The notes under the pieces: generated by a model | What the model saw: the letters and a program-made list of their open reading frames with translations, nothing else | What the model was told of the DNA's origin: nothing | The model's database searches: none | Origin: Styela clava | Lineage: Eukaryota | Direction of reading: 5' to 3' | DNA: 64,000 bases | Assembly: GCF_964204865.1 (NCBI RefSeq) | Contig: NC_135256.1 | Coordinates: forward strand, 9,238,001-9,302,000 | Made by a program: the position numbers and the translations under genes | In this document: positions 4,531-59,826 of the stretch, piece after piece | Position numbering within the stretch: position 1 is the stretch's first letter | Layout: every line of letters starts with the position of its first letter

Positions 4531-4930
4531 CAATAGCTCATGTATCGTGCTACAATCTAAAATAGAGCGTTATACAATACAACCCTAACCAAGGCTTTAG
4601 ACAAGCAGAAAATACATGTTATTTTACGCGATGGTTGAAGTTGGGTACCACACACATAAAGACTTATTATTTTATGTCCAGCAATAGCTCATGTATTGTG
4701 CTACGATCTATTAATAGGGTGATATACGATACCGCTCTGAGCTAGGCTTTAGACAAACAGAAAGAACATTTAATTCACGCAATGATTGAGGTTAGGTGCC
4801 GCAGACATAAAGACTTGTTATTTAATATCCAGAGACTGATCATGTATTGGGCCACATTTTATTAATAGGACGTGGAACGCTTTCACTCTATGCAAGGCTT
4901 TAGACAAGCAGAAACCGACATATTAATTTG
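4531..4930 (+). repeat. Second (type B) ~151-bp repeat, about 2.6 diverged copies, in the arm of foldback element 1
   Basis: CAATAGCTCATGTAT...GGCTTTAGACAAGCAGAAA...ACATAAAGACTT repeats at 4531, 4682 and 4833; mirrored at ~11990-12390, with partial inner copies at ~7290-7375 and ~10535-10665. Confidence 0.8.
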
Positions 4931-4944
4931 CCTTAGCGCAATGA

Positions 4945-7290
4945 ATGTAGTTTCTTACCTCGATAACTCATACTTATCTTAGCGTAACAATTTTTGCATA
5001 TATCATTCCTGACCCTCACCTGACTTCGTCATCCAAAAATTACGTCAATGCGATGTCACAATAACGAAATCGAGCTTGCCCAATAATAGCGACCATAATG
5101 CAATCGTGATAAATACGTCTGTGTGTCCGCTATGGATGTAGTTTCTTACCTCAATAACTTCTAGTTAACTTAGCGTAACAATTTTTGCATATAATATTTA
5201 TGACCTTCACATGACTTCGTCATCCAAAAATTACGTCACGGCAACGTCACAATAACGAAATAGAGCTTGCTCAATAATAGCGACGTTATTCGTAATGGCA
5301 CCTATGGATGTAGTTTCCTACCTCAATAACTTCTAGTTAACTTGGCGTAACAATTTTTGCATATATCATTCCTGACCCCCACCTGACTTCGTCATTCAAA
5401 AATTACGCCACTGCAACGTCACAATAACGAAATAACGCTTGCCCAATATTAGCGACGATTACTAGCAATGCCACCTATGGATGTAGTTTTTTACCTCAAT
5501 AACTTATACTTATCTTAGCGTAACAATTTTTGCATATATCATTCCTGACCTTGCCCTGACTTCGTCATCTAAAAATTACGTCAATGCGAATTCACAATAA
5601 CGAAATAGAGCTTGCCTAATAATAGCGACCATAATGCAATCGTGTTAAATACGCCTGTCTGTCCGCTATGGGTGTAGTTTCATACCTCAATACCTTCTAT
5701 TAGGCTTAGCGTAACAATTTTTGCATATAATATTCATGACCTTCACCTGACTTCGTCATCCAAAAATTACGTCACTGCAACGTCACAATAACGAAATAGA
5801 GCTTTACTATTAATGCCACCTATGGATGTAGTTTCTTACCTCAATGACTTATACTTATCTTAGCGTAACAATTATTGCATATAATATTCCTGACCCTCAC
5901 CTGACTTCATGTTTCAAAAATTACGTCAATGCGACTTCACAATAATGAAATAGAGCTTGCCTAATAATAGCGACCATAATGCAATCGTGATAAATACGTC
6001 TGTGTGTCCGCTATGGATGTAGTTTCTTACCTCAATAACTTCTAGTTAACTTAGCGTAACAATTTTTGCATATAATATTCATGACCTTCACCTGACTTCG
6101 TCATCCAAAAATTACGTCACTGCAACGTCACAATAACGAAATAGAGCTTGCTCAATAATAGCGACGATTACTATTAATGCCACCTATGGATGTAGTTTCT
6201 TACCTCAATGACTTATACTTATCTTAGCGTAACAATTATTGCATATAATATTCCTGACCCTCACCTGACTTCAGGTTCCAAAAATTACGTCAATGCGACT
6301 TCACAATAATGAAATAGAGCTTGCCTAATAATAGCGACCATAATGCAATCGTGATAAATACGTCTGTGTGTCCGCTATGGATGTAGTTTCTTACCTCAAT
6401 AACTTCTAGTTAACTTAGCGTAACAATTGTTGCATATAATATTCCTGACCCTCACCTGACTTCATGTTCCAAAAATTACGTCAATGCGACTTCACAATAA
6501 TGAAATAGAGCTTGCCTAATAATAGCGACCATAATGCAATCGTGATAAATACGTCTGTGTGTCCGCTATGGATGTAGTTTCTTACCTCAATAACTTCTAG
6601 TTAACTTAGCGTAACAATTTTTGCATATAATATTTATGACCTTCACATGACTTCGTCATCCAAAAATTACGTCACGGCAACGTCACAATAACGAAATAGA
6701 GCTTGCTCAATAATAGCGACGTTATTCGTAATGGCACCTATGGATGTAGTTTCCTACCTCAATAACTTCTAGTTAACTTGGCGTAACAATTTTTGCATAT
6801 ATCATTCCTGACCCCCACCTGACTTCGTCATTCAAAAATTACGCCACTGCAACGTCACAATAACGAAATAACGCTTGCCCAATATTAGCGACGATTACTA
6901 GCAATGCCACCTATGGATGTAGTTTTTTACCTCAATAACTTATACTTATCTTAGCGTAACAATTTTTGCATATATCATTCCTGACCTTGCCCTGACTTCG
7001 TCATCTAAAAATTACGTCAATGCGAATTCACAATAACGAAATAGAGCTTGCCTAATAATAGCGACCATAATGCAATCGTGTTAAATACGCCTGTCTGTCC
7101 GCTATGGGTGTAGTTTCATACCTCAATACCTTCTATTAGGCTTAGCGTAACAATTTTTGTATATATGATTCCTGACCCTCACCTGACTTCGTCATCCAAA
7201 AATTACGTCACTGCATCCTCCCAATCACGAACTAGAGCTTGCCTAATAATAGCGACGATAATAAAGCCGTAATAATGGCGCTATGAGTGT
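4945..7290 (+). repeat. Tandem array, 13 units of 172-173 or 191 bp (one of 154), left arm of foldback element 1
   Basis: Anchor (A/G)TGTAGTTT at 4945, 5136, 5308, 5481, 5672, 5826, 6017, 6190, 6381, 6572, 6744, 6917 and 7108. Confidence 0.95.
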
Positions 7291-7783
7291 ATTTTTTTAC
7301 CACACAACTAAAGCCTTGTTATTTGATGTCCTTCCGTACGTCATGTATTCGTCCTACCTTTATTCATAAGACGTGAAACAATGTTAAGATCCTTCAAATG
7401 TTAATACCACTACAATGTTTCCAGACCTTTTTCATCTTGCGGTTCACTAACAGCGAAATATTAAGAAAAATGTTTTCTGTTCTCATACCGATCTTTGAAC
7501 ACTCGCTCGCTAAAATTGGTTAACAGAAATTTGACATAGTGGAGGAAGTGGTATAGTATTTGATCTCCAAGTAATTCAGGGGAAATGTGAAAAAGGATGA
7601 AAGAAGACCATATTTATAGGCTCTTCAATTTTCTAACTGTTGAAATTTGGAATGGATTCGACTTCAAGCGCAATCGATAATTAAGCATTCGTTCACAATC
7701 CTGAGTTAATTTCCAGGATGCATCTCTCATCTATCTGTCGTTACGTTTGTTACGATATTTGTATTAGTGTTTTTTGTCAAACC

Positions 7784-7862
7784 TGTGCATCATAATGACG
7801 CACAACCTGAACCATAACCTGTTACAATACTATGTTCAGGTTGTGCGCAATCTTGGTGCACA
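7784..7862. repeat. Short hairpin/palindromic interspersed repeat, copy 1
   Basis: TGTGCA..ATGACGCACAACCTGAAC...GTTCAGGTTGTGCGCAATCTTGGTGCACA; related copies at 10207, 19385 and 36652. Confidence 0.75.
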
Positions 7863-10206
7863 AACTACGCAAGCACCAAATTTACTAGGAAATAAAATCG
7901 ATACCTTCTAGGTATTTGTTGAGCCCAGCTTTGGGTCGCGACCCATATACAGTATATGGAAATACTGTCGAAACATACGCGTAAAATAAAGAGTACTATT
8001 TCAAAATACCCGTTTTTTGTTGCAATTAACAGTACAAGCCTGCTAATGTAGTCGCCAGTGGTTCAAGTGGATATACACCCGGTGGAGAACAGTCAATTAT
8101 TTGTTGGCGAGAATTGTTATGCAGCGGGATGATCACGACGACGCAGTGAAAGATAATGATATCACGAGAACAAGAATGAGAAAATTGCTACATTTTATAG
8201 TATATCCCTGGGAAAGAATGTAGTTCATTCTTATGTTCCATGCCAATGCTTTTCAAACTACCAAAGACTCTCAACACTTTTGCTTCTTCTCTTCTATAAA
8301 AATACATTGTTATTATATATTCGCATTTCCATCTGTTTGTTCGTGCTCCCAGATAACCGATCAGCGCCTCCAAGGAGGACGGGGTCCCCTTTCATGAAAC
8401 CCTGTCATAAACTAAAAGAGGCGATCGTGCTTCTCTTGCCTGTTGTCATGCTGTCCCTGGAATTCAGCTACAACAAAAATTTCACGAAAACGGATTTTTA
8501 AATTTTATGATTTCAATAATATTCTCAACAATGAATGATATACGGGTGGTAAAATGCCAAGTTATTCCAACAACATGATCATGTTTTGCAATTTACAACC
8601 AATATTTTGTATGTAACTTTGTTTGACAGAGCCCCAAGAGCTCTAACTACAAATTTCAAAAATGTGAGGCTAAAATAGTCACACTACAACATTGTCAAAT
8701 GTGCTGTATTTACGATAGATAACAGGTTTACCAAAAAGAATTACATGCAAAATGGTAAAATAAAGATCAATTCAGCAATATCTACTTGGTGATATTCATC
8801 TGTTGATGATTTTATGTGTTTGTTTCGGAAGTTTAATAACAGAAGTAATTGTGGTTGTTGGGGATGTTTTAAAAAAGGTTGCATGGAAAAAAGTTTTCAC
8901 AAAATGTCAAGGTTTGATAGTAGTAGAGAAGTAGAAAAAATACTTCCATGTTTTTTTTTATTTGATAACCACGCCACAGAACTTCCCCGATAAGTATACG
9001 CAGCAATTGCGAGAGGCAGAAATGCTAAGATGGGATTTCATCGCATTATAAACCAATATTAGCAATTCTTATATATATTCGCGCATTCCCAGCTGAACAG
9101 CGTGAAAAAGATTGTACCCATCTACACACTTTAAGAACTATGTCAGATGAGCGTCATATTATCGAATATCAGTAAAGGAATAGTGCAAAGGGAAAAGACA
9201 TATAAGGCGAAACTTTCAGTAGTATGCAATCAAATAATCTTATTGTAGAATATATATTTAAAAACATTTCGTCACGCCAACTGCAGTCCGAAACTTTTTG
9301 TCTCTGGCTGAGCTTAGATACCAATTGGCACTCATGTAAACTGGTAAGACTGTAAGAGGCACGCGATGGAGCAGATACTAAGAGTATCCATCCCCCAGCT
9401 GTCATTTGAGTGGGTACTGCTGTTTTTATTGCAGATGTTACGGATCTTTTTGTATTAAAGATTTACTGGCATCACCGATTTAAGGATGTTGGAAACCAAC
9501 CCGCAATATTACAAAACTTACTTCCAACACGCGGTTTGAATGAATGAAAAAGCTGAAACTAGTATTCTTTAGAACAGCATACAAATTCTATGGAATGAAA
9601 TCATACACAAAAGCTCGTCAAAAACCTATAGCTCAATAATCAAATGGAATTTGATGCATGTGCGCAAAAATGTGCTCGTTACCACGTATAACCGAAGCAC
9701 GCAGGAATATGCGTGTGATGTACTAGTATTCAAAACGTTTGACTCAACTATGTTGGCATAACAGGTGCACATCTCGGTTTCGCATACGCATACCTTCTAT
9801 CTCCACAAGGATATATTAATTTTGCCAAAGTCAATGCAGCACTGAAAAGTTGCGGTTCTTCCAAAAGAAAACACGTTACACATCTTTAGATACCAGTGGA
9901 TGGTATTACATGGCCTTGTTCGGAGTGAAAGACGAGGTCAAATATTCCAATCCAATTCAACTAATAAAATATTTCCCAAGTCCCTAAGCTTAAACTAGGA
10001 AAACGAAATGCCAGATGTAGTTTGAAGAGCGCAATAGAAAGTGGATAGATGCTGTCGATGGATCTTGGTTTGTATTAGTGAAATAAACTACCATTTATTC
10101 TACTAAAATTGAATTTCTGACATTGTAAGGAGATTCAATGTTACTATGTATGCAAACCTAAACCATGTAGTTATGAAATAATTGTTTTTAACAAAAAGGC
10201 GCTCTT

Positions 10207-26950: not shown

Positions 26951-27956
26951 CAGGGGTGTGCAAGTGCAACCTTTATTACAGAAGGGCCAGATACAAGTAA
27001 CTGGGTAAAGCCGTGGGCCTCACTTAGGAAACTCTACTTACGTAAGTCTCTAGATACAGAAAATCCGTAATTTTTATGCGGTATTTATCTGTTCTTCCCT
27101 TTTTTCCAAATGTACCTTTTCTACTCATTATGCAGTAATCTAACTCTAACATGTATTTGTTACGGGTTTTAACTACTAGTAGTATTATAATTTCTACAAA
27201 TATTGCTTACGATGGGACTTCCAGAACGAATTAATTTCGTAGGTAAAGTTTCTACTGTAGTTGCAAGCACAAAAGTGTTATTGATCTTACAGCATTGTAA
27301 GGGGTCTTTGCAGAAATTTCGAGTTAAAAACCAACAATTTCTAAAGAAAACTGCTATTCAAATTTATTGTCACACCGACTTTAAAAACGAATTCGATGAG
27401 AAACACGCGTTTATAACATTGTGTATTTTCCAACAGGATTTTGCTAGATAGTTTTGCTAATGTGACAGTGGCACTCAGGTACTAGTATATGCTTCGCGAC
27501 GCAAAGAGATTGAAATTGCGCGCACGTACTAGGATAGGATAGGATTTACATATTTATCCCGGGGGAGAGGAAAGCCGATAAGACGGCTCATCCATATGGC
27601 GAACCACGGCCTCTCGTCCGGTTACCATTCCAAGTCGGGTATGGGATTAGTTATATTGTTTGTTTTCGGAAGCATGGACTTAGTGGTGGAGGAAGCCGTA
27701 ACCGACCAGCGGTTACGTGAACCACCCGACGACGGCGAGGAGTCCAGCAATCCTCTCGCAGATAACCATCCCTCATGGGATTCGAACCTGCGAACCCACG
27801 CAGAGTAATTAGAGGTGTGGTGGCGAGCGTATTCCTAACGCTTAGCCCGTTGAGCCACACCGCCGCTGGAACCAGATTAACTTAACTAAAAACTCGTTTC
27901 GCGGACACACCATTCAAATTGGCACTTCTCCGCGTACCGCAGTTTGCACAACCCTG
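26951..27956. mobile_element. hAT MITE with a nested SINE
   Basis: TIRs CAGGGGTGTGCAA...TTGCACAACCCTG; perfect 8-bp TSD GTTTAAAT (26943-26950, 27957-27964); right end shared with 62140-62267. Confidence 0.85.
27530..27867 (-). mobile_element. Full-length tRNA-derived SINE (~340 bp)
   Basis: On the minus strand: Pol III A box TGGCTCAACGG, B box GGTTCGAATCC, unique body and (ATCCT)n tail; at least 5 partial copies elsewhere in the window. Confidence 0.88.
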
Positions 27957-45043: not shown

Positions 45044-45590
45044 GATGCTGTACTAAAAGTCTCACAATTCCAAAGATACAGTAGACTACCGTATGTCAGT
45101 CTTGTAACAGCCAAAAACTGAACAATGTAAAAACAGTTAGTGGTCCTTTTCTATAGGTAGTGCCACCTGCAAATTTATTTCCTATTTATTTCCCCCCCCC
45201 CATTAACTCTTGAAACTGGTTTGCAGTTAAAATAAGATATCTAGCTGTTTCCGAGGAGGGTTGCCTACGCAGTACTAACAAACTTACCTGTAGGTAGGGT
45301 AACTAATTTTATTGAATTGATGAATAACAAATCTCTCTCTCATTATTCAATTTTCGGTCTTTTGGCTCTGACACTCGCTACCTGCCACACTTGGTTTAGA
45401 ACCAAAGTTACCCTAGCAGACATCTCTCAGCGGACATCTCTCTCGTTTTCGGAACGGTAAAATAGCGTTGCCAGAAAACGATTTAACATGGCACTCAAAT
45501 GCCGCGTCGGAAAAAAGGAAAGCTAGTCGCAAAGTACTTGCCAGATTTACGGCGAAATTTTGCTACACTCGGAATTACACAAAACATTAC

Positions 45591-48105
45591 ACATGGCCCA
45601 AACAGGAATTTTACATCAAAATTAATAAATATCAGTATTTCAACCCCAAATTCTGTACTTTTCGATTACGTGCCCCACTTTTGAATAAAATATCCTAGAA
45701 GAACATATTGTAAAGTAACCTCGAACCAAGTTTGAGAAAAAGTGTATGTCGGGAACATATATTAATATATTGTTAAACATGGCCCAAACAGGAATTTTAC
45801 ATAAAAATTAATAAATATCAGTATTTCAACCCCAAATTTTGTACTTTTCGATTATGTGCCCCACTTTTGAATAAAATATCGGCATTTTAACCAAAAATTC
45901 TGTACTATTTGATTACGTGCCCCACTTTCAGATAAGATATTTCAAAAAAAATACTGTGAAGTCATCTCGAACCAAGTTCCAGAAAAATTGTATGTCGGGA
46001 ACATATATTATTATCTTGTCAAACATGGCCCAAACAGGAATTTTACATCAAAATTAGTGAATATCGGCATTTTAACCCAAAATTTTGATCTTTTCGATTA
46101 CGTGCCCCACTTTCGAATAAAATATCCCAAAAGAACATATTGTGAAGTAGCCTCGAACCAAGTTTGAAAAAAATTGTATGTCGGGAACATATATTAATAT
46201 CTTGTTAAACATGGCCCAAACAGGAATTTTACATCAAAATTAGTAAATATCGGCATTTTAACCCAAAATTTTGGATTTTTCGATTACGTGCCCCACTTTT
46301 GAATAAAATATCCCAAAAGAACATATTGTGAAGTAACCTCGAACCAAGTTTGAGAAAAATTGTATGTCGGGAACATATAATAATATCCTGTTAAACATGG
46401 CCCAAACAGGAATTTTACATCAAAATTAATAAATATCAGTATTTCAACCCCAAATTTTGTACTTTTCGATTACGTGCCCCACTTTTGAATAAAATATCCT
46501 AGAAGAACATATTGTGAAGTAACCTCGAACCAAGTTTGAGAAAAATTGTATGTCGGGAACATATATTAATATATTGTTAAACATGGCCCAAACAGGAATT
46601 TTACATCAAAATTAGTGAATATCGGCATTTTATCCCAAAATTTTGGACTTTTCGATTACGTGCCCCACTTTTGAATAAAATATCCCAAAAGAACATATTG
46701 TGAAGTAACCTCGAACCAAGTTTGAGAAAAATTGTATTTCGGGAACATATATTAATATATTGTTAAACATGGCCCAAACAGGAATTTTACATCAAAATTA
46801 ATAAATATCAGTATTTCAACCCCAAATTTTGTACTTTTCGATTACGTGCCCCACTTTTGAATAAAATATCCTAGAAGAACATATTGTGAAGTAACCTCGA
46901 ACCAAGTTTGAGAAAAATTGTATGTCGGGAACATATATTAATATATTGTTAAACATGGCCCAAACAGGAATTTTACATCAAAATTAGTGAATATCGGCAT
47001 TTTAACCCAAAATTTTGGACTTTTCGATTACGTGCCCCACTTTTGAATAAAATATCCCAAAAGAACATATTGTGAATTAACCTCGAACCAAGTTTGAGAA
47101 AAATTGTATGTCGGGAACATATATTAATATCTTGTTAAACATGGCCCAAACAGGAATTTTACATCAAAATTAGTGAATATCGGCATTTTAACCCAAAATT
47201 TTGGACTTTTCGATTACGTGCCCAACTTTTGAATAAAATATCACAAAAGAACATATTGTGAAGTAACCTCGAACCAAGTTTGAGAAAAATTGTATGTCGG
47301 GAACATATAATAATATCTTGTTAAACATGGCCCAAACAGGAATTTTACATCAAAATTAATAAATATCAGTATTTCAACCCCAAATTTTGTACTTTTCGAT
47401 TACGTGCCCCCCTTTTGAATAAAATATCCTAGAAGAACATATTGTGAAGTAACCTCGAACCAAGTTTGAGAAAAATTGTATGTCGGAACATATATTAATA
47501 TCTTGTTAAACATGTCCCAAACAGGAATTTTACATCAAAATTAGTGAATATCGGCATTTCAACCCAAAATTTCGGACTTTTCGATTACGTGCCCCACTTT
47601 TGAATAAAATATCCCAAAAGAACATATTGTGAAGTAACCTCGAACCAAGTTTGAGAAGAATTGTATGTCGGGAACATATAATAATATCTTGTCAAACATG
47701 GCACAATCATGAATTTTACATCAAAATTAATAAATATCAGTATTTCAACCCCAAATTCTGGACTTTTCGATTACGTGCCCCACTTTTGAATAAAATATCC
47801 CAAGAGAACATATTGTGAAGTAACCTCGAACCATGTTTGAGAAAAATTGTATGTCGGGAACATATAATAATATCTTGTCAAACATGGCACAATCAAGAAT
47901 TTTACATCAAAATTAATAAATATCAGTATTTCAACCCCAAATTTTGGACTTTTCGATTACGTGCCCCACTTTTGAATAAAATATCCCAAAAAACATATTG
48001 TGAAGTAACCTCGAACCAAGGCTTTGGAAAATTGTATGTCGGGAACGTATAATATTATCTTGTCAAACATGGCCCAAACAAGAATCCGACTTAAAATTAA
48101 TAAAC
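45591..48105 (+). repeat. Tandem array of 186-bp units (13 full plus 1 partial), left arm of element 2
   Basis: Anchor ACATG at 45591, 45777, 46023, 46209, 46395, 46581, 46767, 46953, 47139, 47325, 47510, 47696, 47882 and 48067; two sequence variants interleave. Confidence 0.96.
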
Positions 48106-48467
48106 AACGCTATCACAACCCAGGATACTGTATACATTATAATGGCGTGCCTCAATTTAAGTAAGATAACATAAACGAATTGTGAAATCATCTCGTTCTT
48201 TCATACTAGGGATCTATCTTATATTTAAAAAAAATTTTTAAAATGGTTGGTCTTAGTAGAAAGCCACCACACCACGTCAAGGTGCCAACCATCGTGGCGG
48301 TTTTCATCTCAATATTATAGACTAGACCAAGAGAGAAAAACCTGGCAAAGGGCATGTTAAGCCAAATAGGTAAAACAGACTGATCCTTAGTCTGACTTGA
48401 ACGATGTACCTAAAAAAAATGAGAATGTAAATGATCATATCTAGTTGAATATTGCTTTGCATGTAAT

Positions 48468-51080
48468 TTAGCATCGAATGCACTTTTTGCAATTCCATTC
48501 TATTTCGCTGTTTTCCAGTGCCTCAACTGGCACTGAAATACTACAACATTTCGGATGGTACCATTTTAAACATGAAGTGCATTCGATCATGGTCTGATTT
48601 TCAATGTAAGACAGTTGGCAGTTGCAAAAAATCGGAATTTCCAATCGCCTGGGCGCGGGTATAACACGTTTCTTGTTGATGTTAAATACCGACGAAAAAT
48701 TTTCAGAGACTACACCATCGCATATTTTCTTCCTAAGATTTTTCTCGTCAAATAGGATATGCTCTGGTCGTATTTTGTTACATATAGGGCTATGCAAAAA
48801 CTAATCGAGAATGGGCCACATGATGCACCTAAAGTTTGTTGCTGGACAACGGGGAATTCAATTTGTACTTTATTTGTTTATTCCTTGCCTTGGCCGCATA
48901 AGAAGCGAAATCGCATATTTGTCATTTTCATTGTACTTCATATAGGAGCTATCATAAATCTGTATAGTATTTTGGTCGGCGGTGAATATATTTGATGCTG
49001 TTACCCAGTGATTTTCGTGCACAAATAAAATTTGAACAAATTTTTCAGAAGGAACATACACTTTAGGGCCAGATAGCGTTGTATAAAAAGTCGTGCTTTG
49101 CAACCCGTCTATTTCAGAATACCGAGATGACAAAATTAATTGTGCGGTGTTCATAATATCCGAGGTAAACCAGTCTCTTCTAAAATTAGTTTTGGAATTC
49201 ATTATTTTATGATCGACATCAGATAAATGTACAAATTTTTGGAATGGAATTTTCGGTGAGACGAACCGCAACATCATAGATTGTGTAGTAGACGCTTCGT
49301 CAGCTTTTATTAGAATTGGGCTATCGTTATTAGAAAGTTCTTGAGGGCGAAACATCTTTAGAGGTCTAATGGGGGGCTGAAGATACACTCCTTTACATTT
49401 GTCTTTACCCTGAATTCGGGATCGTTTACTCCATTTCTCAATTTCTTGGTCAATTTGGTCATTGTTTTCAACTTTCCTTTTTTTTGGACAAACAATCAAA
49501 TTATCTTCATATTCCCTAATCAAAGAGTCATGGAGTTCATCATAAACTATAGCAATCTCGTCAAGACGTTTAAATCGTCTGTTGTTTAAACGAGTTCGCT
49601 TTAGTTCCTGCTGACTTTTTTCCATGATTCCCTGAGTGCGATTATCTCGCGATATGTTTTGTTTCTCAGAAGCTGAGACTCTTGCATAAAAAGTCGAATA
49701 TTTCAAATAGCCAATTGAATTACCATATCTTCCCAAATCACCTACCATCAAACTTCCCCAGAGACATATCTTCGGGACATAGAACGTTTTAAATTTGGAC
49801 AATATTTCCGGGCAGTAAAAATTGTTGGAACCCAAAATTTCTGCATTACTTGCTATTTCAATGGCTGACGAAATGTCGCAATTCCTTAATTCCGTAAAAG
49901 GATTTATCTCGCTCAAATCTTCACCTGCTAAAAGTTCATCCGATGTCCCTAGGTCTAATTCACCATCAGAAGGCACAGGAATGTTCTGTTTTTCAATTTG
50001 CTTTTGCAAGTAAGTCCAACTATCATGCATAAGATTAGAATTTTGGCAAATTAATAAAATAGTGAAATGATAAACAATTTTACGGACTGTTTTCAACTCT
50101 CCGCAACAAACGAGTAGTCCAAATATATGCATTAGTTCACGTTTTAATTTTGGTAGTCTACAAGCTAACTGTTTAAAATTCTTCATGGTATGACTCGTGC
50201 ATAAATGAAGAAAGGGGCGTGAAAGCATATCTAAATTTGCGGTACCTTCAATGACAGCGTAACATCGCGAAATGTACGATTCCAAACTTTTCCGCATGTT
50301 AACCTAAATTATTGACTTTATAAGGGCCATGCTTCCATCGCATATAAAAATTTTCGCGGGGAATCTTTTAGTTAGTTTGGAAACATCACAACGGAATTGC
50401 ATGAGAGAGTTCGAAATATTTGGAATATTGTGCCGATTTGTTACAAACGTGGCAACGGCCAGGGGTGATTTGCCTTTTTGTGGATGACGCGTAACAATTT
50501 CATAAACGTAGTATGGACTATGCCCACCGGACGCCAAAATTCCACCAGTAGCGTCAATGTATATAATGTCAATAGAGGAATTTTGAATGAATTTTTTTAC
50601 CGAAGCCTCTGACCAAAACATAATACCCGAAGGAACCCTTGAAATTTGCTGCAAGGTTCCACGAATTACTTGATTTTTGGACCTTTCGTACTGCAACTTC
50701 CTCAGTGAATATAGCGAATCCCATTGGTTGCCGGGGTCGGGGACACGGATAACCCTAGATTCATGACGTGCCTTTTTTAAAACAGCTTGGAATGGGGCAT
50801 CGTCCCTGTTACCAGAATGAAAGACTTCAGACGAGAGAGCACCTATCTTTTTTGAATAAATCTTACGAGGGAGAACATGAACCAATTTTTCCTGAAACTC
50901 TTTCCTACGTTTACCTTTAAGTCTCATTGATTTTAACCCAATATGGCGAATCTTGCCTGTGTATGAAATATGAAACATGCGGGGGTCTTTCCGATAGGAT
51001 ACTACAGAAATTTTACGACTGCAACCTGTAAAGCAACAATGCCCACTACAAGCAAAAAGTGGGGCACGTGATCGAAAAGT
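48468..51080 (-). pseudogene. Disrupted MULE/NOF-like DDE transposase fused to a Ulp1-like (C48) protease and a PHD finger
   Basis: Zn-finger-like GHCCFTGC..YTGKIRH; IYIDATG (D1), ICDGSMAL (D2), CTSH (CxxH), RTQGIMEK (E); protease NHWVT, IYDS, QQTLGASCG; PHD FCNC..IECTSCLKWYHPKC..WNCKKC. In-frame TAG at 50304-50306 and two frameshifts near 48875 and 48785. Confidence 0.88.
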
Positions 51081-51640
51081 TCAAAATTTTGGGTTAAAAT
51101 GCCGATATTCACTAATTTTGATGTAAAATTCCTGTTTGGGCCAAGTTTAACAAGATATTAATATATGTTCCCGACATACAATTTTTCTCAAACTTGGTTT
51201 GAGGTTACTTCACAATATGTTCTTCTAGGATATTTTATTCAAAAGTGGGGCACGTAATCGAAAAGTACAAAATTTGGGGTTGAAATACTGATATTTATTA
51301 ATTTTGATGTAAAATTCCTGTTTGGGCCATGTTTAACAAGATATTATTATATATTCTCGACATACAATTTTTCTGAAACTTGGTTCCAAATGACTTCACA
51401 ATATGTTTTTTTGAGATATCTTATCTAAAAGTGGGGCACCTAATCGAAAAGTACAGAATTTGGGGTTAAAATGCCGACATTTATTAATTTTAATGTGAAA
51501 TTTCTTTTTGGCCATGTTTGACAATGTAATATTACATGTTCCCAACATATAAATTTCATAAAACTTGAATTAGGATGACTTCAATATAAGTTCTTTTTTT
51601 ATATCATCTTCAAAAATCTGCCCGGCCATCGGAAATCACA
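51056..51640 (-). repeat. Inverted 186-bp array (about 3 units), right arm of element 2
   Basis: Reverse complement of the left unit (AAAAGTGGGGCAC) at ~51056, 51241 and 51427, diverging toward the TIR. Confidence 0.9.
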
Positions 51641-54256
51641 GATAAGTTTCGTGTAATTCCGAGTGTAGCAAAATTTCGCCGTAAATCTGGCAAGTACTTT
51701 GCGACTAGCTTTCCTTTTTTCCGATGCGGCATTTAAGTGCCATGTTAAATCGTTTTCTGGCAACGCTATTTTACCGTTCCGAAAACGAGAGAGATGTCCG
51801 CTGAGAGATGTCTGCTAGGGTAACTTTGGTTGGTTTAGAGTGGAAGATACGGTAAAACGGCGCGAGACATATCTCCATACGACCCCTCCAAATAGAAGAC
51901 AAAAAAATCAATTCACCGTGCCAGAGCATCGACTTCCTTGTTTACTTCGTGACATTGGCTAATCAGAAAAATGCAAAAAGTGACGTAACAAGGCTCCCGC
52001 TCCGACCAGAGACAATGTATAACAATTTGTTGTTATGTAAAATCTATGCTCAGACACTTCCTCACTCTGATAGATTTTCAAGCGTGGTCGTAAACATTAC
52101 CTCGTTTTCGCGTTTTTGAACTCTATTCGTTAGTTTTCTGTTGTGTTTTGGAAACCCAAATATAAATCAGATAACTCAATGATCATTCTGTCTTCCTAGG
52201 AGTTTTAATTTAATTGCAGTAATAAAAAATAAGTGTAGAAATAGCTGTATAAGAAGAATTTTTCGGGGGTCAAAGGACGGGGAAAGGTCCATAGTGGTGG
52301 TAGTCTTTTAGGGATAAATTCGTTATTTCAAGTAAAATTTATAAAAAGACTGAAAATTGCTTATTTCGAAATTCTCCAAATTCATAAATTAGATCGATAA
52401 AGAGCCCGTTGTAAAGGTCTTGTATTAGGAGTCAAGTCGTCTGGATCGGTGTCGTGTCGTCATGTCTTCATCGTTTGTGCTCCGTGTGTATCTACAATAT
52501 TAAACTACATCAACAACGTTCAACAACATGTTCCTATATGCTACATGTTCTTAACTGGCTAAAGTCTGAACGTCACATTAACATTGGTTAATCTGCAAGA
52601 CGATATCGTCGAGATATAAGCCGCTCGAACAGTATAGCCAGAGACATGTTTGTGAACGCTCTCTCAGCTACGCTCTGGGTGGAGTCGTCAAACAAACCAC
52701 GACATGACACGCATTGATCCAGCAATGCAGCAATAAGGGATATCTGCCCTGAGTGCGGAACCGGCCCGCATGACGTCCCACATCTATTTATATGTTCCGC
52801 CAAACCAACACACTTATCCACAAGGGACCTGTGGGAGAGTCCGGTCGAAGCCGCCGTGTTCCTGGGTCTTCAAACACAAAACAACGGAACATTATCTCGT
52901 GTTTATGGGTTTGTCATTGTTAATTGACGGGAAGAGAGAAGCCGATAAGATGGTTTAATTATGTGGCGAATCGCGGTCTCTCGTTCGGCTACCAGTCCAT
53001 TTCGGTATGAGATGGTTATCCAGTTATTTGATTCAAATGCACGAACTTGTATTTCTGAAATGCATCAATTCAAGGCGTTTTAGTTTAGCAGCAGTGATCA
53101 AAAAGTAGTCCCGTAAAAAGCCATTTTAAAATTAGTTAAATGGCAGGTGGGCAAATCTTTCGAAATAAAAGAATGAATATGTAAGCAACTCGCAGATAAA
53201 GCATAAAAGTCCTTAACATATATATGGGAAGAATTTTTCGAAGTTTAGGGATCCGGTGACATAAATTCAGGCGGTTTACAAGACACAGGCCAGGTTTTTG
53301 TGTCCAGAACGTTAAACGTTTACTAAAGCTACAAGGACAAGTAAGCGTAGGCTACCCTCTTCGAGGTTGGCTGGCAATTCTGATAGTAAGGGTTCGTCTC
53401 CTCTGTGGCCTATGGAGTTTTTCTTAAATCTCACATTTTTGCATTAGGGGCGGGGGCCTTGTACAAAAGACCCGGATTGTCAACTCTTGGCCTATAGGCT
53501 ATTGGTACTAGGGGTGACCAGCCTACTTTCGACCGCGATAGACTAAAGCTTGCGATCGACTGATCGGTCATAAGGTCATACACGAAAACGAACGAGTACT
53601 GAATATTCAGATAACTGCAATCGTGCAAAAAAAAGTTACATCGCTGCCAATAAACTGGGCTCTGTGAGCACATTCTTAATGAAATCGGCACAAAATTTGT
53701 ATTTTCCATGTTCCATTTGATTTGTTGATTTGATTATGTAATTGTACCATATTTATTCGAATCATACAATTCAGATCCAGCCTAATTTTTAGTCGTAGGT
53801 ATTGAAAATTCCTCAAAAACCTTGCCAAGTGTCCATGTACTATCTATTCTAAACGACGGAAACTAGATGTGCCGCGGCGCACTATAGAGCACTATATGGG
53901 AACCATCGCAATATGCCACAAGCAAAATGAGTGGATTATACATGAGAGAAAGGTAGACAGACTGGTGTAACTTTATGCCTAATCGTCTAAAATTCACTAA
54001 TAGTTCCTTCCTTAACTAATATAATGATTTGAGTTATCACATAAACTGAGCACCGAAGATGTGTATCTGCTGAGCATTTCAATAAGACAACAAAACACTG
54101 CCCAATGAGAAGTAAAAATACGGAGATACGAAAAGTAATAGCCGTTTTGGAATATATTTTTATGTGCTGGGTGGCGCGACAGCAATTTGTATATGAAGTG
54201 GGTTCGGACCAGTATGTTATGTGATATCCACGCTGGATCGAGAAGTTAACTCTATC

Positions 54257-55198: not shown

Positions 55199-55533
55199 AC
55201 TCTATCACGTCATATAATCAGGTTTTCTGGTTCCGACACCTACATACACCGAGCCCTGGAGCAATTTTCATATCTCCACAGTATACTCATTAATTCTACA
55301 CCGGATGGTGTGGATTCTGTAGAATAATGAATAAAATTCGCAACTCGTTTTATATGGATTTATATGCTAGATCGTTCGTTATCGTTCTAATCAGTTTCTC
55401 AAGGAAACTTTATAGAGGACTTGCTCGGGTCACGTGACCTTGTTTACTGGACGGCAATAAAACAAAAACGTCCATTTGGCTCCTGTCAGTTGCAAGTCAG
55501 ATTATACGTTTCCGTTTTGTTTGGCTGTTGAAA

Positions 55534-55745
55534 ATAGTTATTTCGTATTGTTCCGCTGGCTGTACGTATAGTATAGACAACGAAATGTATCTTCAGTTAT
55601 ATTCTACTGTTTTCAGAAGATCCGGAACATCGCGCAATGTGGATATCATCTATTGGCAGTACTGCTTGGTGTCAAGTCCAGAAGCCATCTCACTTGTGTT
55701 TCACTATTTGCGGACAGCCCTTATCAATTTTTTAAATATTCACAA
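55534..55745 (+). pseudogene. THAP domain remnant inside the left TIR (start ATG>ATA)
   Basis: Inverted copy of 58116-58322: IVISYCSAGCT.., EDPEHRAMWI. Confidence 0.65.
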
Positions 55746-55851
55746 GCTTCCTTATTTCAATGGAAAGCGATGACAAACTAGTAAGTGTGTAAAGTAAACT
55801 ATTATAAAGTGTGAAAAGTTGAATAGATAACTAAAGTTTGGATTCTCCATC

Positions 55852-56050
55852 TAAGAATACGCTCGCCACCGCATGTCTGATCCCCCTGGTAGCTTCACAG
55901 GTTCCAATCCCATGCGGGGATAGTTATGTGCGAGGGGATTGCAGCTCTCCTCCCACTGAGGGTGGTTCACACGACCGCTGGTCGATTACGACATCCCCCA
56001 CCATCAAGTCCATGCTTCTAAAACAAATAACTGGCTAACTAATCCCGACA
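55852..56050 (+). mobile_element. SINE fragment within the left arm of the ISL2EU element
   Basis: GAATACGCTCGCCACC...GGTTCCAATCCCATG...AAGTCCATGCTTC matches the 27530-27867 SINE. Confidence 0.75.
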
Positions 56051-56439
56051 TAGAATGGTAATCGTACGATGTTGCACCTTGCAATCTGTCCCCAACCACA
56101 GATAAATTCTATCCTAAAAACTACCTACATTGGTAGGCATAGTTGCATTTTAAATTGAAAGAAATCTTCATTAATGGTCAGAAGGTGTTGTCTGATTGTT
56201 TTATTAGTTAGCAGGTAATTTATTACTGATCTGATACACAAATTTGGCACTGTCAAATGATGATTAGTGTTTAATTTATTTTCAAGAAAAAGGGAAGATA
56301 ACCCATTATCAGCTGCTTATATGTCCCATCGATATTTGAATTTTCGCCATCTCCAGAGAGGAAGAGAATAGTTAGAAAAGGGGGGATTTTGAAGAAAGGC
56401 AAAAGGCAGGACCATTTCAACAAATTCTGTTAACTTGTA

Positions 56440-56965
56440 CGCGTTGCAATATTACTTTGCAGTTGTTAGCATAAACATTTAATGTGTCTTTCGACTAGAC
56501 CTACCACACTTTAAAATAAGCCGCCTACACCCCTTTTCACTAGAACCATAATACTGTAAAATATTTGATAGAAATTACCCCTGAGGCATCATATCTTCCA
56601 TTTGAAAGGGCTGTGGAGGCAGATACATTTTTTACTCTAAATTATGGAATGTTACTTGCAGGTTATCTTATCCTTGCTTATAGATATCTTGAGGTCAGTG
56701 ACTCCAACTGACCCATGCATGCCACACTGAAAATTCTCTTGTGTACCGATAAAATTAGGCTGTTGGAGCCTTCAGACCTTGAAAACAGTCGAATCTGAGC
56801 ACGATGGATTCATGTGAAACACGTAATATGCATTTATAGGCAAAAATATCCCATCCTGAGCAGCACCGATCCACAACCTCCTGCCTATGGAATCAAAACA
56901 TTAGACAAATTGGTGTACTGTGCGCATTCACGAATCTTTGCGAATCAAGTGTGCCTTTTGACTAA
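56440..56965 (+). pseudogene. Decayed ISL2EU / DDE_Tnp_4-type transposase C-terminal half
   Basis: Across frameshifts: HNTVKYLIEITP, IISSI*KGCGGR, LLAGYLILAYR (cf. PGD.ILADRG), WIHVKHVI..RQKYPIL (cf. RIHVERVIG), LDKLV, CAFTNLCESSVPFD*. Confidence 0.8.
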
Positions 56966-57199
56966 AGAAAATTAAGCATTGAAATGGTCAATCTCAATAT
57001 CAACCTAGTATCTGCAGATAAAACCAATTGTTTTTTAAAAATACATTTTTGATGTGCTTTATTTTTCAAATATATTTTACAATTACTGTAAAGTGTGTGA
57101 TACATTTGGTACCATGAATACTATTTGCAAATTAGCTTGGGTTACACCCCTCTCAAATAAAAGTTTAGACTCTTAAGTCATATCTCATAATATTCTTTA

Positions 57200-57603
57200 A
57201 ACAGAATGTTGCGGCTAGCTGGCTACCCATCAGAATTTTCTTTTAGATCACAAAGTCACAATATTACGCCTCGCTAAGTTGCATTAGCAACTGTATCTGG
57301 TTGTAGTATCGGTGTCCAACTTTAGACTGAAACCTTTACTACCAGATCCATCGAAACAATTTTTTTTCTTGATAGGGTCGTCTTGAAATTGCTTTCCTTA
57401 AAGCACAATGGACATTATATCTCCACCAATCCACAGTAATCACAAGTTACTTTGTCATTACGATAAGCATCAATAAATGGATACTGAGGATGTATTATCA
57501 AGTCACGCAAGCTGAGGTCTTGTTGCAACCTATACTTTGCCATCCATCTATTCCATGGTCGCACCCATATCTGTAAGATAATGGATACAGATAGAGTTTT
57601 CAT
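57200..57603 (-). pseudogene. Decayed YqaJ/lambda-exonuclease-like gene
   Basis: LIIHPQYPFIDA..VTCDYCGLVEI*CP (cf. GASPDG..C.CCG..EIKCP) and HRYYNQIQLLM..YCDFVI. Confidence 0.82.
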
Positions 57604-57639
57604 AGAATCTAACGATCAAAGAGTGTGAAATTTATGGGC

Positions 57640-57825
57640 CAGCTATTTGTTTTCAGAAGCATGGACTGGGATTATGGGGAATGGTCGTAACCGATCAGCG
57701 GTCATGTGAACCACCCTCGGTTGGAGTAGAGCTGCAATCCTCTCGCACATAACTATCCCCGCATGGGATTGAAACCTGTGAAACTACCAGGGTGATCAGA
57801 GATCCGGTGGCGAGCGTATTCCTAG
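57640..57825 (-). mobile_element. SINE fragment within the right arm of the ISL2EU element
   Basis: Inverted counterpart of 55852-56050 with the same 5' junction (CCATCTA.GAATACG). Confidence 0.75.
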
Positions 57826-58115
57826 ATGGCGAATTCAATTGAATTCTGGTTATTTTTTCCAGGCCCCATGGTGTTAAATTTTAGTTATCTATTCAACCTT
57901 CCACACTTAGTAATAGATTACCTGCTAATTAAGGAAACAATACCTTATAGCAATTGATTATCAATTCCTTACTGTCTTACACAAGTCAAGTCTGCAACTG
58001 CAAGTAGGCCTAGGCCTACTAATAACAGTAGTTTGTCATCTGCTTTCCATTGAAATGAGGGAGCTTGTGAATATTTAAAGAAATTGATAACGGCACACTA
58101 TCACCAACCACATTA

Positions 58116-58322
58116 TCACTCACCATCAACGAAGTGCTGACCGCAAACAGTGAAACACAAGTGAGATGGCTTCTGGACTTCAAGCAGTTCTGCCAATAGG
58201 CAATAGATCATATCCACATTGCGCGACGTTCCGGATCTTTTGAAATCAGTGGAATAAAACTTAAGATCCATTTCGTTGTCTATACTATACGTACAGCCAA
58301 CGGAACAATACGAAATAACCAT
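58116..58322 (-). pseudogene. THAP zinc-finger domain remnant inside the right TIR
   Basis: MVISYCSVGCT..LKFY / KDPERRAMWI (shifted frame) / VCGQHFVDG. Confidence 0.75.
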
Positions 58323-59826
58323 TTTCAACAGCCAAACAAAACGGAAACGTATAATCCGACTTGCAACTGACAGGAGCCAAATGGACGTTTTTGATTTATT
58401 GCCGTCCAGTAACAAAGTCACGTGACCCGTGTAAGTCCTCTATAAAGCCTTCAGTTATTTTAAAATTGCCTCCCGAGAAATATCGTGGTATTTTGGTATC
58501 TTTTCTCGTGTGTGGTTTTGTAATGTCGCTCAAAATTATATTCTTTCGTGACAGATATTACTTGAAAACACACCAGACACTGAGGTTTAACGTTGTTGTG
58601 CCTAGTTTACATCTCTCACCTTTTTTCTACACTCATTATATGATGAATTGTTATATTTGAAAAAAAATTATTACTTGTAGCGTGAGCAGGCCTAGTGCTA
58701 CCGTCAAATAAACAACCAAGTCCGTCTAAGTTGGGACCTCGGACCCCAAAAAAAAAATTAAAAAAACTGGACCGCGCGGCACTAAGTCAACTCTGCGTTT
58801 CGTCACTGCTGTCACGTGGCCAAAGCTTGAAAATAGACAAAAGGTCTCTTCAAATGAGGAGTTACTTGACGCGAGCTCATTTAATCTGCTTGGTCCTGTC
58901 TGCACAAGACAATTCATTCACCTTTTACCGATCACAGGACGTCATTCGCATATAGGCATCGTCTTGTCTTGACCGTCACCGTGATTTTAACAAACTTTAA
59001 TCCGACATCGGGTTTAGAAAATGGACTATAGAAAAAGGCGAATAGAATACAGCACACACACACATATATATATATAAATAAAAAAGAAAGTAGAAAGAGA
59101 GAATTAGAGTAAAAACATATGAAACGTTTACAGAAAAACTAAATCACCAATTGCTGTCAATGATTTCATTGTAAACAAGGGAACTTGCAGATATAGAAAT
59201 AAACTTACATATATATAAATAATATATACTATTTCTTATATCACTGTCCAAAAATAATCCATTTCCCTCAAATATATATCTGCTGTTTTAATTCCGCCGT
59301 TGCTTATACCTACGGCTTAGTCAAAAATCGGTCTGATAATTTAAGCTTAAATTGTTTACAGCAAACAGATATTTAGAAAATCAACAACAGTTCTTTAAAT
59401 AACAAATAGTCGACTGTAGGTAAGAACTTCATCGACAATCCGGACGACCGCATTACTACCAAGAATAGCTAAAATGCGCTCGAATCTGGATCATATGTTC
59501 ATATTAATGGCATGAAGTAAGTAACAGATATTTATGTATAACATTCACTAAAGCACGAGGTGCTGGATCTAGGTCAGTTGGTGAATATTATATATATATT
59601 TATGTAACGTTCAGCTTTGGCAACTGGGTCGTGGTGATCGTTGTGTTACGAGTACCATTTTCCAGGATATGTGGCAGCATGAAATAAGAGTAAATGTTCT
59701 CACAGATCTTTACAAGTCTTCCCATTGCATTATAATTTCAGTGTACCTACGTTAACATTGGTGGTGAAATGCGATAATCGCACTACTATAAATTCAGTCT
59801 TAATATTTGAATTTGATGTATCGCTC

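What the first reader, a model, noticed from the sequence alone, without database searches (positions are those of the whole stretch)
55414..58441. ISL2EU-type transposon whose terminal inverted repeats encode a THAP domain for both convergent genes
Seen: ~630-800-bp inverted arms each hold an inward-reading THAP-like sequence (MVISYCSVGCT / KDPERRAMWI / VCGQHF). Between them lie a plus-strand DDE transposase remnant and a minus-strand YqaJ exonuclease remnant. Established: ISL2EU elements pair a THAP-DDE transposase with a YqaJ exonuclease. Inference: the promoter, start codon and DNA-binding THAP exon are duplicated as part of the TIR, so one module could head both the transposase and the nuclease. 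That would give co-regulated proteins with the same DNA specificity. The ORF track hides this because everything is frameshifted.
Basis: partly seen in the sequence, partly recalled or inferred. Interest (0 to 1): 0.78.

Follow-up and report, generated by a model that had tools for sequence, protein, structure and literature searches.

The report
Dead long-armed ISL2EU transposon copy
This is one decayed copy of a very abundant, non-coding sea-squirt DNA transposon whose two 0.8-kb inverted ends both carry a broken THAP exon, most likely because one end was copied onto the other, not because the element was built to share THAP between two genes.

Summary
Window 55411-58444 is an insertion with inverted arms of about 625 and 807 bp. 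Each arm carries an inward-reading THAP relic. A YqaJ relic lies on the minus strand. The DDE relic is only weakly supported.

The arms are not a one-off. At least 150 copies in this genome (apparently Styela clava) share the structure, and none has an open frame over 188 aa.

The functional reading is only partly supported. For it: contigs from three RNA-like runs join the right-arm THAP exon donor to the YqaJ relic through an exact GT..AG intron.

Against it:
- Both arms share one THAP frameshift and one SINE fragment.
- The arm boundary lies inside that SINE. The SINE continues on the left side only, so the right arm is a truncated copy of the left end.
- The acceptor lies inside the YqaJ domain and is out of frame.
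- None of 99 YqaJ homologues examined carries THAP.
- One intact ISL2EU family here, examined in detail, has a THAP exon at the transposase end only, outside its roughly 306-bp TIRs.

Best reading: a non-autonomous "two-left-ends" ISL2EU derivative that later amplified. Two first-reader notes describe the same family on other DNA of this genome.

The parts
55411..55413 (.). Left flank T-A-T. It holds the candidate 2-bp target duplication (TA or AT).
   Evidence: 18 of 19 copies have TAT before AGAGG; a paralogous, nearly empty site.
55414..58441 (.). Element core AGAGGACTTGC...GCAAGTCCTCT. A decayed, non-autonomous ISL2EU-type copy.
55411..56035 (+). Left inverted arm (L type). It is shortened by internal deletions relative to sister copies.
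   Evidence: 17 L-type against 3 R-type diagnostic positions.
55534..55716 (+). Left THAP exon relic. The start codon is ATA here, the frameshift is shared with all copies, and the 3' end with its splice donor was removed by a roughly 40-bp deletion.
   Evidence: Pfam finds no hit in this copy but does in the L arms of sister copies.
55852..56069 (+). Fragment of a tRNA-derived SINE, with the 5' head missing. It runs about 34 nt past the end of the arm homology.
   Evidence: score 18 against a shuffle mean of 6.8; 0 of 2000 shuffles reach it.
56070..56798 (.). Interior stretch with no recognisable coding relic.
   Evidence: no matches.
56799..56972 (+). Possible C-terminal tail of a DDE_Tnp_4 transposase domain (weak).
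   Evidence: E 0.058, 13.5 bits, profile positions 118-153 of 158. Searches are negative.
57222..57631 (-). YqaJ exonuclease domain relic, frameshifted.
57571..58123 (-). Intron inferred by homology to the GT..AG joint seen on sister copy L005. The donor GATG|GTGAGT and the acceptor ttatcttacag|AT are both intact in the window.
57638..58444 (-). Right inverted arm (R type).
   Evidence: 36 R-type against 1 L-type diagnostic positions.
57638..57824 (-). The same SINE fragment in the right arm, cut off at the arm boundary.
   Evidence: the sequence beyond the boundary scores 6 against a shuffle mean of 6.4.
58124..58322 (-). Right THAP exon relic (ATG at 58322-58320). It carries the shared frameshift plus the R-arm-specific 7-bp duplication, and ends at the splice donor.
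58442..58444 (.). Right flank A-T-A.
   Evidence: 16 of 19 copies.

Best explanation
Window 55411-58444 is one decayed copy of a high-copy, non-autonomous ISL2EU-type cut-and-paste transposon family in what appears to be Styela clava.

Proposed history (inferred):
1. The founder was an internally deleted element.
2. Its transposase-side end consisted of the terminus, a promoter/5' leader, the first (THAP) exon with its splice donor, and an intron already holding a SINE. This end was duplicated in inverted orientation onto the other end ("two left ends").
3. The breakpoint fell inside the SINE and just upstream of the YqaJ domain.
4. This long-armed founder persisted while its arms diverged by about 5%. 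It then amplified to at least 150 copies, presumably mobilised in trans by a transposase that recognises the terminal roughly 340 bp.

Shown here:
- the family-wide arm structure;
- the THAP and YqaJ homology;
- the frameshift and SINE shared by both arms;
- the polarity of the SINE truncation;
- the absence of long open frames in the copies examined and in the 150 YqaJ-relic matches scored;
- a GT..AG joint in RNA-like contigs from the right-arm THAP exon into the YqaJ relic.

Inferred:
- the duplication mechanism;
- trans-mobilisation;
- that the THAP-to-YqaJ splice is an accidental by-product (a transposase exon-1 donor finding a cryptic acceptor) that encodes no fusion protein.
For: Family and copy number:
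- 331 DNA matches, and 24 of 30 fetched loci have both termini within the locus.
- 150 of 150 scored YqaJ-relic matches, from 348 candidates. The longest open frame is 188 aa.

Arms:
- Majority L against majority R arm is 95.1% identical over 780 columns, with 38 diagnostic substitutions.
- In most of the 19 copies each arm carries its own side's states, for example 38/0 and 0/38; a few deleted or poorly aligned arms give mixed or low counts. The duplication therefore predates the burst, and no conversion has occurred since.
- The first 340 columns differ at 5 of 323 positions, against 33 of 457 further in (Fisher p 1.6e-4).

THAP:
- Pfam hits above cut-off in the L arms of three sister copies, and many arm hits in the genome scan.
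- The same frame break sits between CSVGC... and ...KDPERRAMW in both arms of all 19 copies inspected. R arms add a 7-bp duplication.

SINE:
- Arm positions 621-807 match repeats at unrelated loci.
- An independent copy at window 27630-27870 has a tRNA-like head.
- Beyond the arm boundary, the L side continues the SINE (0 of 2000 shuffles reach its score). The R side does not (80% of shuffles reach its score).

RNA:
- Runs X1, X5 and X6 come from three studies and are RNA-like by guess. Each has one contig with the joint L005 3258/3946, with ends CT..AC on the plus strand. This equals GATG|GTGAGT ... ttatcttacag|AT on the minus strand.
- The joint is absent from the DNA-like run X10.
- The acceptor lies inside the YqaJ homology. 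Read by hand, the spliced reading gives a stop after 7 codons.

Comparators:
- No THAP in 0 of 24 or 0 of 75 YqaJ homologues.
- Intact family A (L047) has a THAP-HTH-DDE ORF of 531 aa, a YqaJ ORF, and TIRs of about 306 bp that do not contain the THAP exon.
Against: - No intact member of this family was found, so the progenitor's architecture is unknown.
- Genome searches score only the best candidates (40 to 150 per call), so an autonomous copy could have been missed.
- The RNA status of X1, X5 and X6 is a guess by the tool. The joint contigs have only 29 letters on the shorter side, under the tool's 31-letter bridging rule.
- The DDE relic that defines which end is the "transposase end" is weak (E 0.058).
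- The higher L/R identity of the first 340 bp could reflect an old gene conversion rather than cis-acting constraint. In that case the shared frameshift could have spread between arms that were once functional.
- In most copies about 190 nt of possible YqaJ N-terminal sequence lies between the SINE and the acceptor. The truncation of YqaJ by the arm is therefore not proven.
Confidence: 0.7

Rival explanations
1. In the autonomous progenitor the long TIRs were a functional module. Each carried a promoter, a start codon and a THAP exon. One was spliced to the transposase and the other to the YqaJ nuclease, giving both proteins the same DNA specificity. The copies seen are decayed descendants.
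For: - Long arms with a THAP exon and an intact GTGAGT donor are present on both sides in the 19 copies aligned, and both termini lie within 24 of the 30 fetched loci.
- RNA-like contigs join the right-arm THAP exon to the YqaJ relic.
- The terminal 340 bp are better conserved between arms than the rest.
- Passages of PMC4482050 call the YqaJ ORF product a DNA-binding protein.
Against: - Both arms share the frameshift and the same SINE fragment, and the SINE is truncated on the right only.
- The acceptor lies inside the YqaJ domain and is out of frame.
- 0 of 99 YqaJ homologues examined carry THAP; some carry PHD, SAP or SWIM instead.
- Intact family A of the same genome keeps THAP at one end only, outside its TIRs, and the Pfam scans found no THAP on the YqaJ side of family A or B copies.
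- Published ISL2EU TIRs are 6-259 bp.
Confidence: 0.1
2. Concerted evolution. The progenitor had ordinary short TIRs. Gene conversion or hairpin-templated repair then progressively extended the arm homology inward. This copied the THAP exon, the frameshift and the SINE from one side to the other in steps, rather than in a single duplication.
For: Identity between arms falls with distance from the tip: 98.5%, then 92%, then 93.8%. This could reflect conversion tracts of different ages.
Against: - The 38 diagnostic L/R differences are stable in most of the 19 copies, so no conversion has occurred since the burst.
- The outcome, a right arm that is a secondary copy of the left, is the same as in the best explanation.
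- The sharp boundary inside the SINE fits one breakpoint.
Confidence: 0.1
3. Two right ends. The THAP exon natively belonged to the YqaJ gene, and it was the YqaJ-side end that was copied onto the transposase side.
For: - The only spliced joint recovered links THAP to YqaJ.
- The DDE relic is weak.
Against: - The SINE continues on the left, non-YqaJ side and is cut on the YqaJ side.
- The L arm has the less damaged THAP, with one frameshift against two.
- THAP is fused to HTH-DDE in intact family A and in the literature passages.
- No THAP was found in 99 YqaJ homologues.
Confidence: 0.05
4. Assembly artefact, or a private inverted duplication of this one locus.
For: None found.
Against: - The same structure occurs at dozens of loci on many contigs.
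- It is also present in contigs of independent public runs.
Confidence: 0.01

Closest known systems
ISL2EU group of the PHIS (PIF/Harbinger-ISL2EU-Spy) DNA transposon superfamily. Source: passages read in PMC4482050, PMC4122938 and PMC9179366.
   Same: - THAP domain at the transposase end.
- A YqaJ exonuclease gene as the second gene.
- In intact family A of this genome (L047) the two ORFs are convergent, the same relative orientation as the YqaJ relic and the weak DDE tail here.
- AT-rich palindromic target with a central AT.
- Animal host.
   Different: - TIRs of about 0.8 kb, against the published range of 6-259 bp.
- Termini start AGAGG rather than the usual GG.
- Flanks are T-AT-A rather than A-AT-T.
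- No intact ORF in any of the copies examined, or among the 150 YqaJ-relic matches scored.
- The THAP exon and a SINE lie inside both arms.
Intact ISL2EU family A of the same genome (L047 = C6:21738000-21747999; also C9 and C4 copies).
   Same: - Same superfamily domains (THAP, HTH_Tnp_4, DDE_Tnp_4, YqaJ) and the same convergent layout.
- TIR begins AGA.., flanked by AT.
- Weak tblastx similarity of the THAP regions (E 0.009).
   Different: - Coding-competent: ORFs of 531 aa and 273 aa.
- TIRs of about 306 bp at 96% identity.
- The THAP exon lies about 600 bp inside the TIR, at one end only.
Long-TIR or foldback-like non-autonomous derivatives in other cut-and-paste superfamilies (recalled, no call). 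PMC4482050 reports PIF/Harbinger TIRs of up to 1042 bp.
   Same: Non-coding derivatives whose ends are long inverted copies of one end, amplified in trans.
   Different: Here the duplicated end carries a coding exon with a working splice donor, and this produces a chimeric spliced RNA with the relic of the second gene.

Membership tests
ISL2EU (PHIS superfamily) | N-terminal THAP DNA-binding domain on the transposase | tested here: met
   Pfam THAP is above cut-off in the L arms of three sister copies (E 5e-6 to 3e-5) and in many arms genome-wide. It is not detectable in the window's own, more decayed pieces.
ISL2EU (PHIS superfamily) | DDE_Tnp_4-type (IS5/Harbinger-like) transposase catalytic domain | tested here: inconclusive
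   Only a C-terminal tail match at 56799-56972, E 0.058, below cut-off. Nothing by tblastn or BLASTP against real DDE ORFs of the genome.
ISL2EU (PHIS superfamily) | Second gene encoding a YqaJ exonuclease domain | tested here: met
   hhalign probability 97.1%, E 6e-11 against 150 YqaJ homologues. tblastn and BLASTP give E about 1e-6 against a Pfam-verified YqaJ ORF. Relic only.
ISL2EU (PHIS superfamily) | 2-bp target site duplication, typically AT | tested here: inconclusive
   Flanks are TAT...ATA in 18 and 16 of 19 copies, which fits TA or AT. The one paralogous site found has 13-15 extra nt on the right, so the duplication is not resolved.
ISL2EU (PHIS superfamily) | TIRs of 6-259 bp, usually starting GG (descriptive range in PMC4482050) | tested here: not met
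   Arms are about 807 and 625 bp here, and about 815 bp in typical copies. They start (T)AGAGG.
Autonomous transposon | Intact transposase ORF | tested here: not met
   No open frame over 163 aa in the 19 full copies. The maximum is 188 aa among the 150 scored YqaJ-relic loci.
   The joint exists in RNA-like contigs. However, the acceptor lies inside the domain, and reading one search gives a stop after 7 codons. 0 of 99 homologues carry THAP.

The most novel reading that the evidence does not exclude
The lost autonomous progenitor really did carry a THAP exon inside each long TIR, spliced to the transposase on one side and to the YqaJ nuclease on the other. The SINE and the frameshift spread between the arms later by conversion. 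On this reading, the THAP-to-YqaJ splice still visible in RNA-like contigs is a fossil of that design.
Probability: 0.08. Interest if true: 0.7.

Novelty: new variant of a known kind. Interest (0 to 1): 0.3.

Why it matters
- It documents an ISL2EU family whose TIRs are about three times longer than the range given in the passages I read.
- It shows how such arms can arise. One end was duplicated, and the event is datable and given a direction by a SINE caught inside the arm.
- A transposase first exon placed in front of another gene relic is still transcribed and spliced. This is a small natural example of exon shuffling by transposon rearrangement.
- With at least 150 copies of about 3.3 kb, each bearing two inward-facing leader exons and 0.8-kb hairpin-forming arms, the family is also relevant to repeat annotation and gene-model errors in this ascidian genome.
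- It does not change how ISL2EU transposition is understood.

Tried and rejected
- **Pfam on 10 window pieces and 10 sister-copy pieces.** No THAP or YqaJ hit. THAP appeared only when the exact frame-B piece of L arms was given.
- **Search for an intact member of the family.** Searching the genome with the YqaJ relic gave no long open frame. The terminal 25-mer was searched with up to 6 mismatches in 17 non-family loci, with no match.
- **DDE relic.** tblastn with three real DDE ORFs and BLASTP were both negative.
- **THAP in YqaJ homologues.**
  - 24 hits among 165 candidates.
  - 8076 hits at E up to 0.001, with the best 150 listed.
  - One search scanned 75 of those 150 and found no THAP. 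The 75 dropped rows were those whose YqaJ match starts before about residue 98 and which have no long C-terminal tail. They have little room for a full THAP, though a short one cannot be excluded.
- **ORF upstream of the YqaJ ORF in L047.** By eye it looks like SAP and SWIM motifs (recalled), but it gave no Pfam hit.
- **Rfam on the element.** Only a chance-level mir-1992 match, E 0.87.
- **Empty site.** One paralogous site was found, but it was not clean enough to fix the TSD.
- **Literature.**
  - Searches for ISL2EU/YqaJ (165 papers, 25 listed), ISL2EU+Styela (0 papers) and THAP+YqaJ (13 papers, listing only).
  - None of these described THAP exons inside ISL2EU TIRs or a THAP-YqaJ fusion.
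  - Supplementary tables of PMC4482050 list TIR lengths per family. They were not opened and may hold longer cases.
- **Not followed up.**
  - The loose ends at the left-arm donor (L005 1236, run X5), because the printed consensus had only 0.63 agreement.


Full report
**What is in the window.**
- The stretch 55411-58444 is bounded by TATAGAGGACTTGC... and ...GTAAGTCCTCTATA.
- The repeat finder finds a chain of collinear inverted pairs: 217 nt at 94%, 155 nt at 90%, 49 nt at 94% and others.
- Aligning the left side with the reverse complement of the right side gives one continuous homology. It runs from the tips to 56035 and 57638. It is interrupted only by deletions in the left arm.
- The arms are about 625 bp (left) and 807 bp (right).

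**It is a family, not a one-off.**
- A DNA search of the window's own genome gave 331 matches from 3309 first-look candidates, of which only 40 were scored.
- Of the 30 loci fetched, 24 show both termini in inverted orientation within the locus.
- I took 19 with clear ends. Typical copies are 3.32-3.38 kb, and the window copy (3034 bp) is a deleted one.
- All start (T)ATAGAGGACTTGCACGGGTCACGTG. The three bases outside AGAGG...CCTCT are TAT in 18 of 19 copies and ATA in 16 of 19.
- A search with a sister copy's YqaJ relic gave 150 matches among the 150 scored of 348 candidates. None had an open frame above 188 aa. No copy among the 19 has an open frame above 163 aa.
- The window's left flank has one paralogue elsewhere (C16) that lacks the element and continues into the window's right flank. 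This shows that the unit is an insertion. However, 13-15 extra bases on the right leave TA against AT unresolved.

**Organism.** A YqaJ ORF from another element of this genome is 100% identical to a protein that NCBI names as Styela clava. That protein lies on a contig whose length equals that of contig C14.

**Domains.**
- *THAP.* The window's own pieces give no Pfam hit. The same piece of the L arm in three sister copies hits THAP above the curated cut-off: 25.2, 27.7 and 26.3 bits against 23.9, with E from 3e-5 to 5e-6. The genome-wide THAP scan lists many arms of the family at 25-28 bits.
- *THAP frames, read directly.* MVISYCSVGC... (C-x3-C) lies in one frame. ...IPLISKDPERRAMW...CGQHFVDG lies in the next frame. 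The exon ends at G|GTGAGT. The frame break between the two parts is present in both arms of all 19 copies. R arms carry an additional 7-bp duplication that breaks the frame again.
- *YqaJ.* A Pfam-verified YqaJ ORF of the same genome (L045) matches the interior of the family on the minus strand at E about 1e-6. A natural 163-aa open frame of copy L016 aligns to a profile of 150 YqaJ homologues with probability 97.1% and E 6e-11 over 90 columns.
- *DDE.* Only a sub-threshold match of 56799-56972 to the last 40 positions of DDE_Tnp_4, E 0.058. tblastn and BLASTP controls with real DDE ORFs found nothing. That the hit falls on the expected family, strand and position gives it some weight, but I count it as inconclusive.

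**History of the arms.**
- I aligned the 38 arms of the 19 copies.
- The majority L and R arms are 95.1% identical over 780 columns, with 38 diagnostic substitutions.
- In most copies the L arm carries L states and the R arm carries R states, for example 38/0 and 0/38. The window's arms score 17/3 and 1/36, and a few other deleted or poorly aligned arms also give mixed or low counts (L002 R, L015 R, L019 L, L020 R).
- Copies are 96.5% (L) and 97.8% (R) identical to their own majority.
- The inverted duplication is therefore older than the amplification, and the arms have not been converting since.
- The first 340 columns (terminus, leader, THAP exon) differ at 5 of 323 positions, against 33 of 457 further in (p 1.6e-4). 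This fits cis-acting constraint on the ends, or an older conversion tract.

**The SINE gives the polarity.**
- Arm positions 621-807 are 76-82% identical to sequences in unrelated places: window 27659-27837, L041, three sites in L047, and L043.
- The independent copy in the window has a tRNA-like head with A- and B-box-like motifs. The naming of the boxes is recalled.
- In a six-way alignment, the independent copies and the L side of the element continue together past the point where the arm homology ends. The R side does not.
- Local alignment of the 70 nt beyond the boundary with the SINE's 3' part:
  - L side: score 18, shuffle mean 6.8 (SD 1.3), reached by 0 of 2000 shuffles.
  - R side: score 6, shuffle mean 6.4, reached by 80% of shuffles.
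- The arm boundary therefore lies inside a SINE that is complete on the left and cut on the right. The right arm is a truncated inverted copy of a left end that already contained the SINE.
- Together with the shared frameshift, this argues that the second THAP exon was placed in front of YqaJ by a rearrangement of a defective element. The phrase "two left ends" is the wording of an earlier first-reader note, s1-810867. It matches what I had proposed before seeing that note.

**RNA.**
- The run search returned nine runs that the tool guesses to be RNA, and several larger DNA-like ones.
- I laid X1, X5 and X6 (three studies) and X10 on the typical copy L005:850-4330. I chose this copy because the window's left arm has lost its donor.
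- Each of the three RNA-like runs has one contig with a joint between 3258 and 3946. It skips 687 nt, and the skipped part has ends CT..AC. X10 has no such contig among the 23,201 laid.
- On the minus strand this is exactly ...TTCGTTGATG|GTGAGT... joined to ...ttatcttacag|ATATGGGTGCGACC.... That is, the right-arm THAP exon donor is joined to an acceptor in the YqaJ relic.
- Both signals are intact in the window, which gives an inferred intron at 57571-58123.
- Caveats: the RNA label is a guess; the shorter side of the joint is 29 letters, under the tool's 31-letter rule; contigs give neither strand nor level.
- The acceptor lies two residues before the conserved G...E..A...Y block of the YqaJ profile, and homology continues upstream of it. 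It therefore sits inside what was continuous coding sequence.
- Reading by hand, the THAP frame runs into a stop after 7 codons, and it is one base out of phase with the YqaJ frame.
- Contigs of X5 also end at the left-arm donor position (1236) and continue with unlike letters. I did not follow this up.

**Comparators.** Pfam scans of the genome show other ISL2EU families that are still intact.
- *Family A (L047).* It has a 531-aa ORF with THAP (residues 6-95), HTH_Tnp_4 and DDE_Tnp_4. It has a convergent 273-aa YqaJ ORF and TIRs of 306 bp at 96%. The THAP coding part lies about 600 bp inside the TIR, at one end only. The flanks read A-AT...AT-T.
- *Family B (L044, L046).* THAP lies on the transposase side only at E up to 0.01. 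That scan scored 150 of 271 candidates.
- *Public YqaJ homologues.* None of the 24 found with the family B protein carries THAP. None of the 75 homologues with a long extension outside the YqaJ match, taken from the best 150 of 8076 hits to the L045 ORF, carries THAP either. Eight or nine of those carry PHD, two SAP and two SWIM.
- *Literature.* The passages I read describe ISL2EU as a THAP/HTH-DDE transposase plus a YqaJ protein, with a 2-bp AT duplication in an A|AT|T target, and TIRs of 6-259 bp usually starting GG (PMC4482050; PMC4122938; PMC9179366).

**Verdict.**
- The element is a dead, deleted copy of a very successful non-autonomous ISL2EU-type family with unusually long arms.
- The weight of evidence says this is the accidental result of an end duplication in a defective founder, not a shared DNA-binding module.
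- What remains open is the architecture of the unseen autonomous progenitor.

Noticed in passing
L047 (G000:C6:21738000-21747999) 1007-9380; also L043 (C9) and C4:24983295-24987674: An apparently intact ISL2EU element (family A). It has a 531-aa THAP-HTH-DDE ORF and a convergent 273-aa YqaJ ORF. Its TIRs are 306 bp at 96%, with flanks A-AT/AT-T. A 193-aa ORF upstream of YqaJ looks by eye like SAP and SWIM motifs but has no Pfam hit. The element is possibly still active.
   Followed up: partly
L044 (C5:2621000-2630999), L046 (C14), C8:18047179-18052728, C1:21961777-21965374: A second intact-looking ISL2EU family (B). Its THAP is split by an intron (Pfam positions 1-47 only). Its YqaJ ORF of 469-516 aa is annotated by NCBI as an uncharacterised Styela clava protein. 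L044 has nested inverted repeats at 734-809/8316-8392 and 3613-3745/8359-8495.
   Followed up: partly
L045 (C2:6901000-6910999) 4473-8637: A YqaJ ORF (minus strand) and an HTH-DDE ORF (plus strand) lie back to back. A THAP ORF lies 2.9 kb upstream on the plus strand, with a zf-BED ORF in between. The YqaJ gene may sit inside the transposase's first intron. This YqaJ is the closest intact relative in the genome of the family's relic.
   Followed up: partly
window 27630-27870 (minus strand): An independent copy of the tRNA-derived SINE whose fragment lies in both arms. The same repeat is seen in L041, L043 and L047. There were 2797 first-look candidates for the arm fragment in the genome.
   Followed up: partly
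L005:850-4330, run X10: DNA-like contigs show 'opposite strands' joints between the two arms (978/4197, 1157/3977, 1652/3553) and large internal skips. This suggests that foldback-type and further deleted derivatives of the family exist.
   Followed up: no
run X13: A run labelled as a different organism holds about half of the sampled words of the typical copy. The family, or a close relative, may occur in another species or sample.
   Followed up: no
window 56128-56316 (minus strand); L005:1701-1979: An open frame of 63-93 aa is retained in many copies, in the interior next to the left arm. It has no Pfam match. It is probably open only because the copies are young.
   Followed up: partly
window 45401-51830: Earlier first-reader notes report a foldback Mutator-like element a few kb upstream. 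I did not examine it.
   Followed up: no
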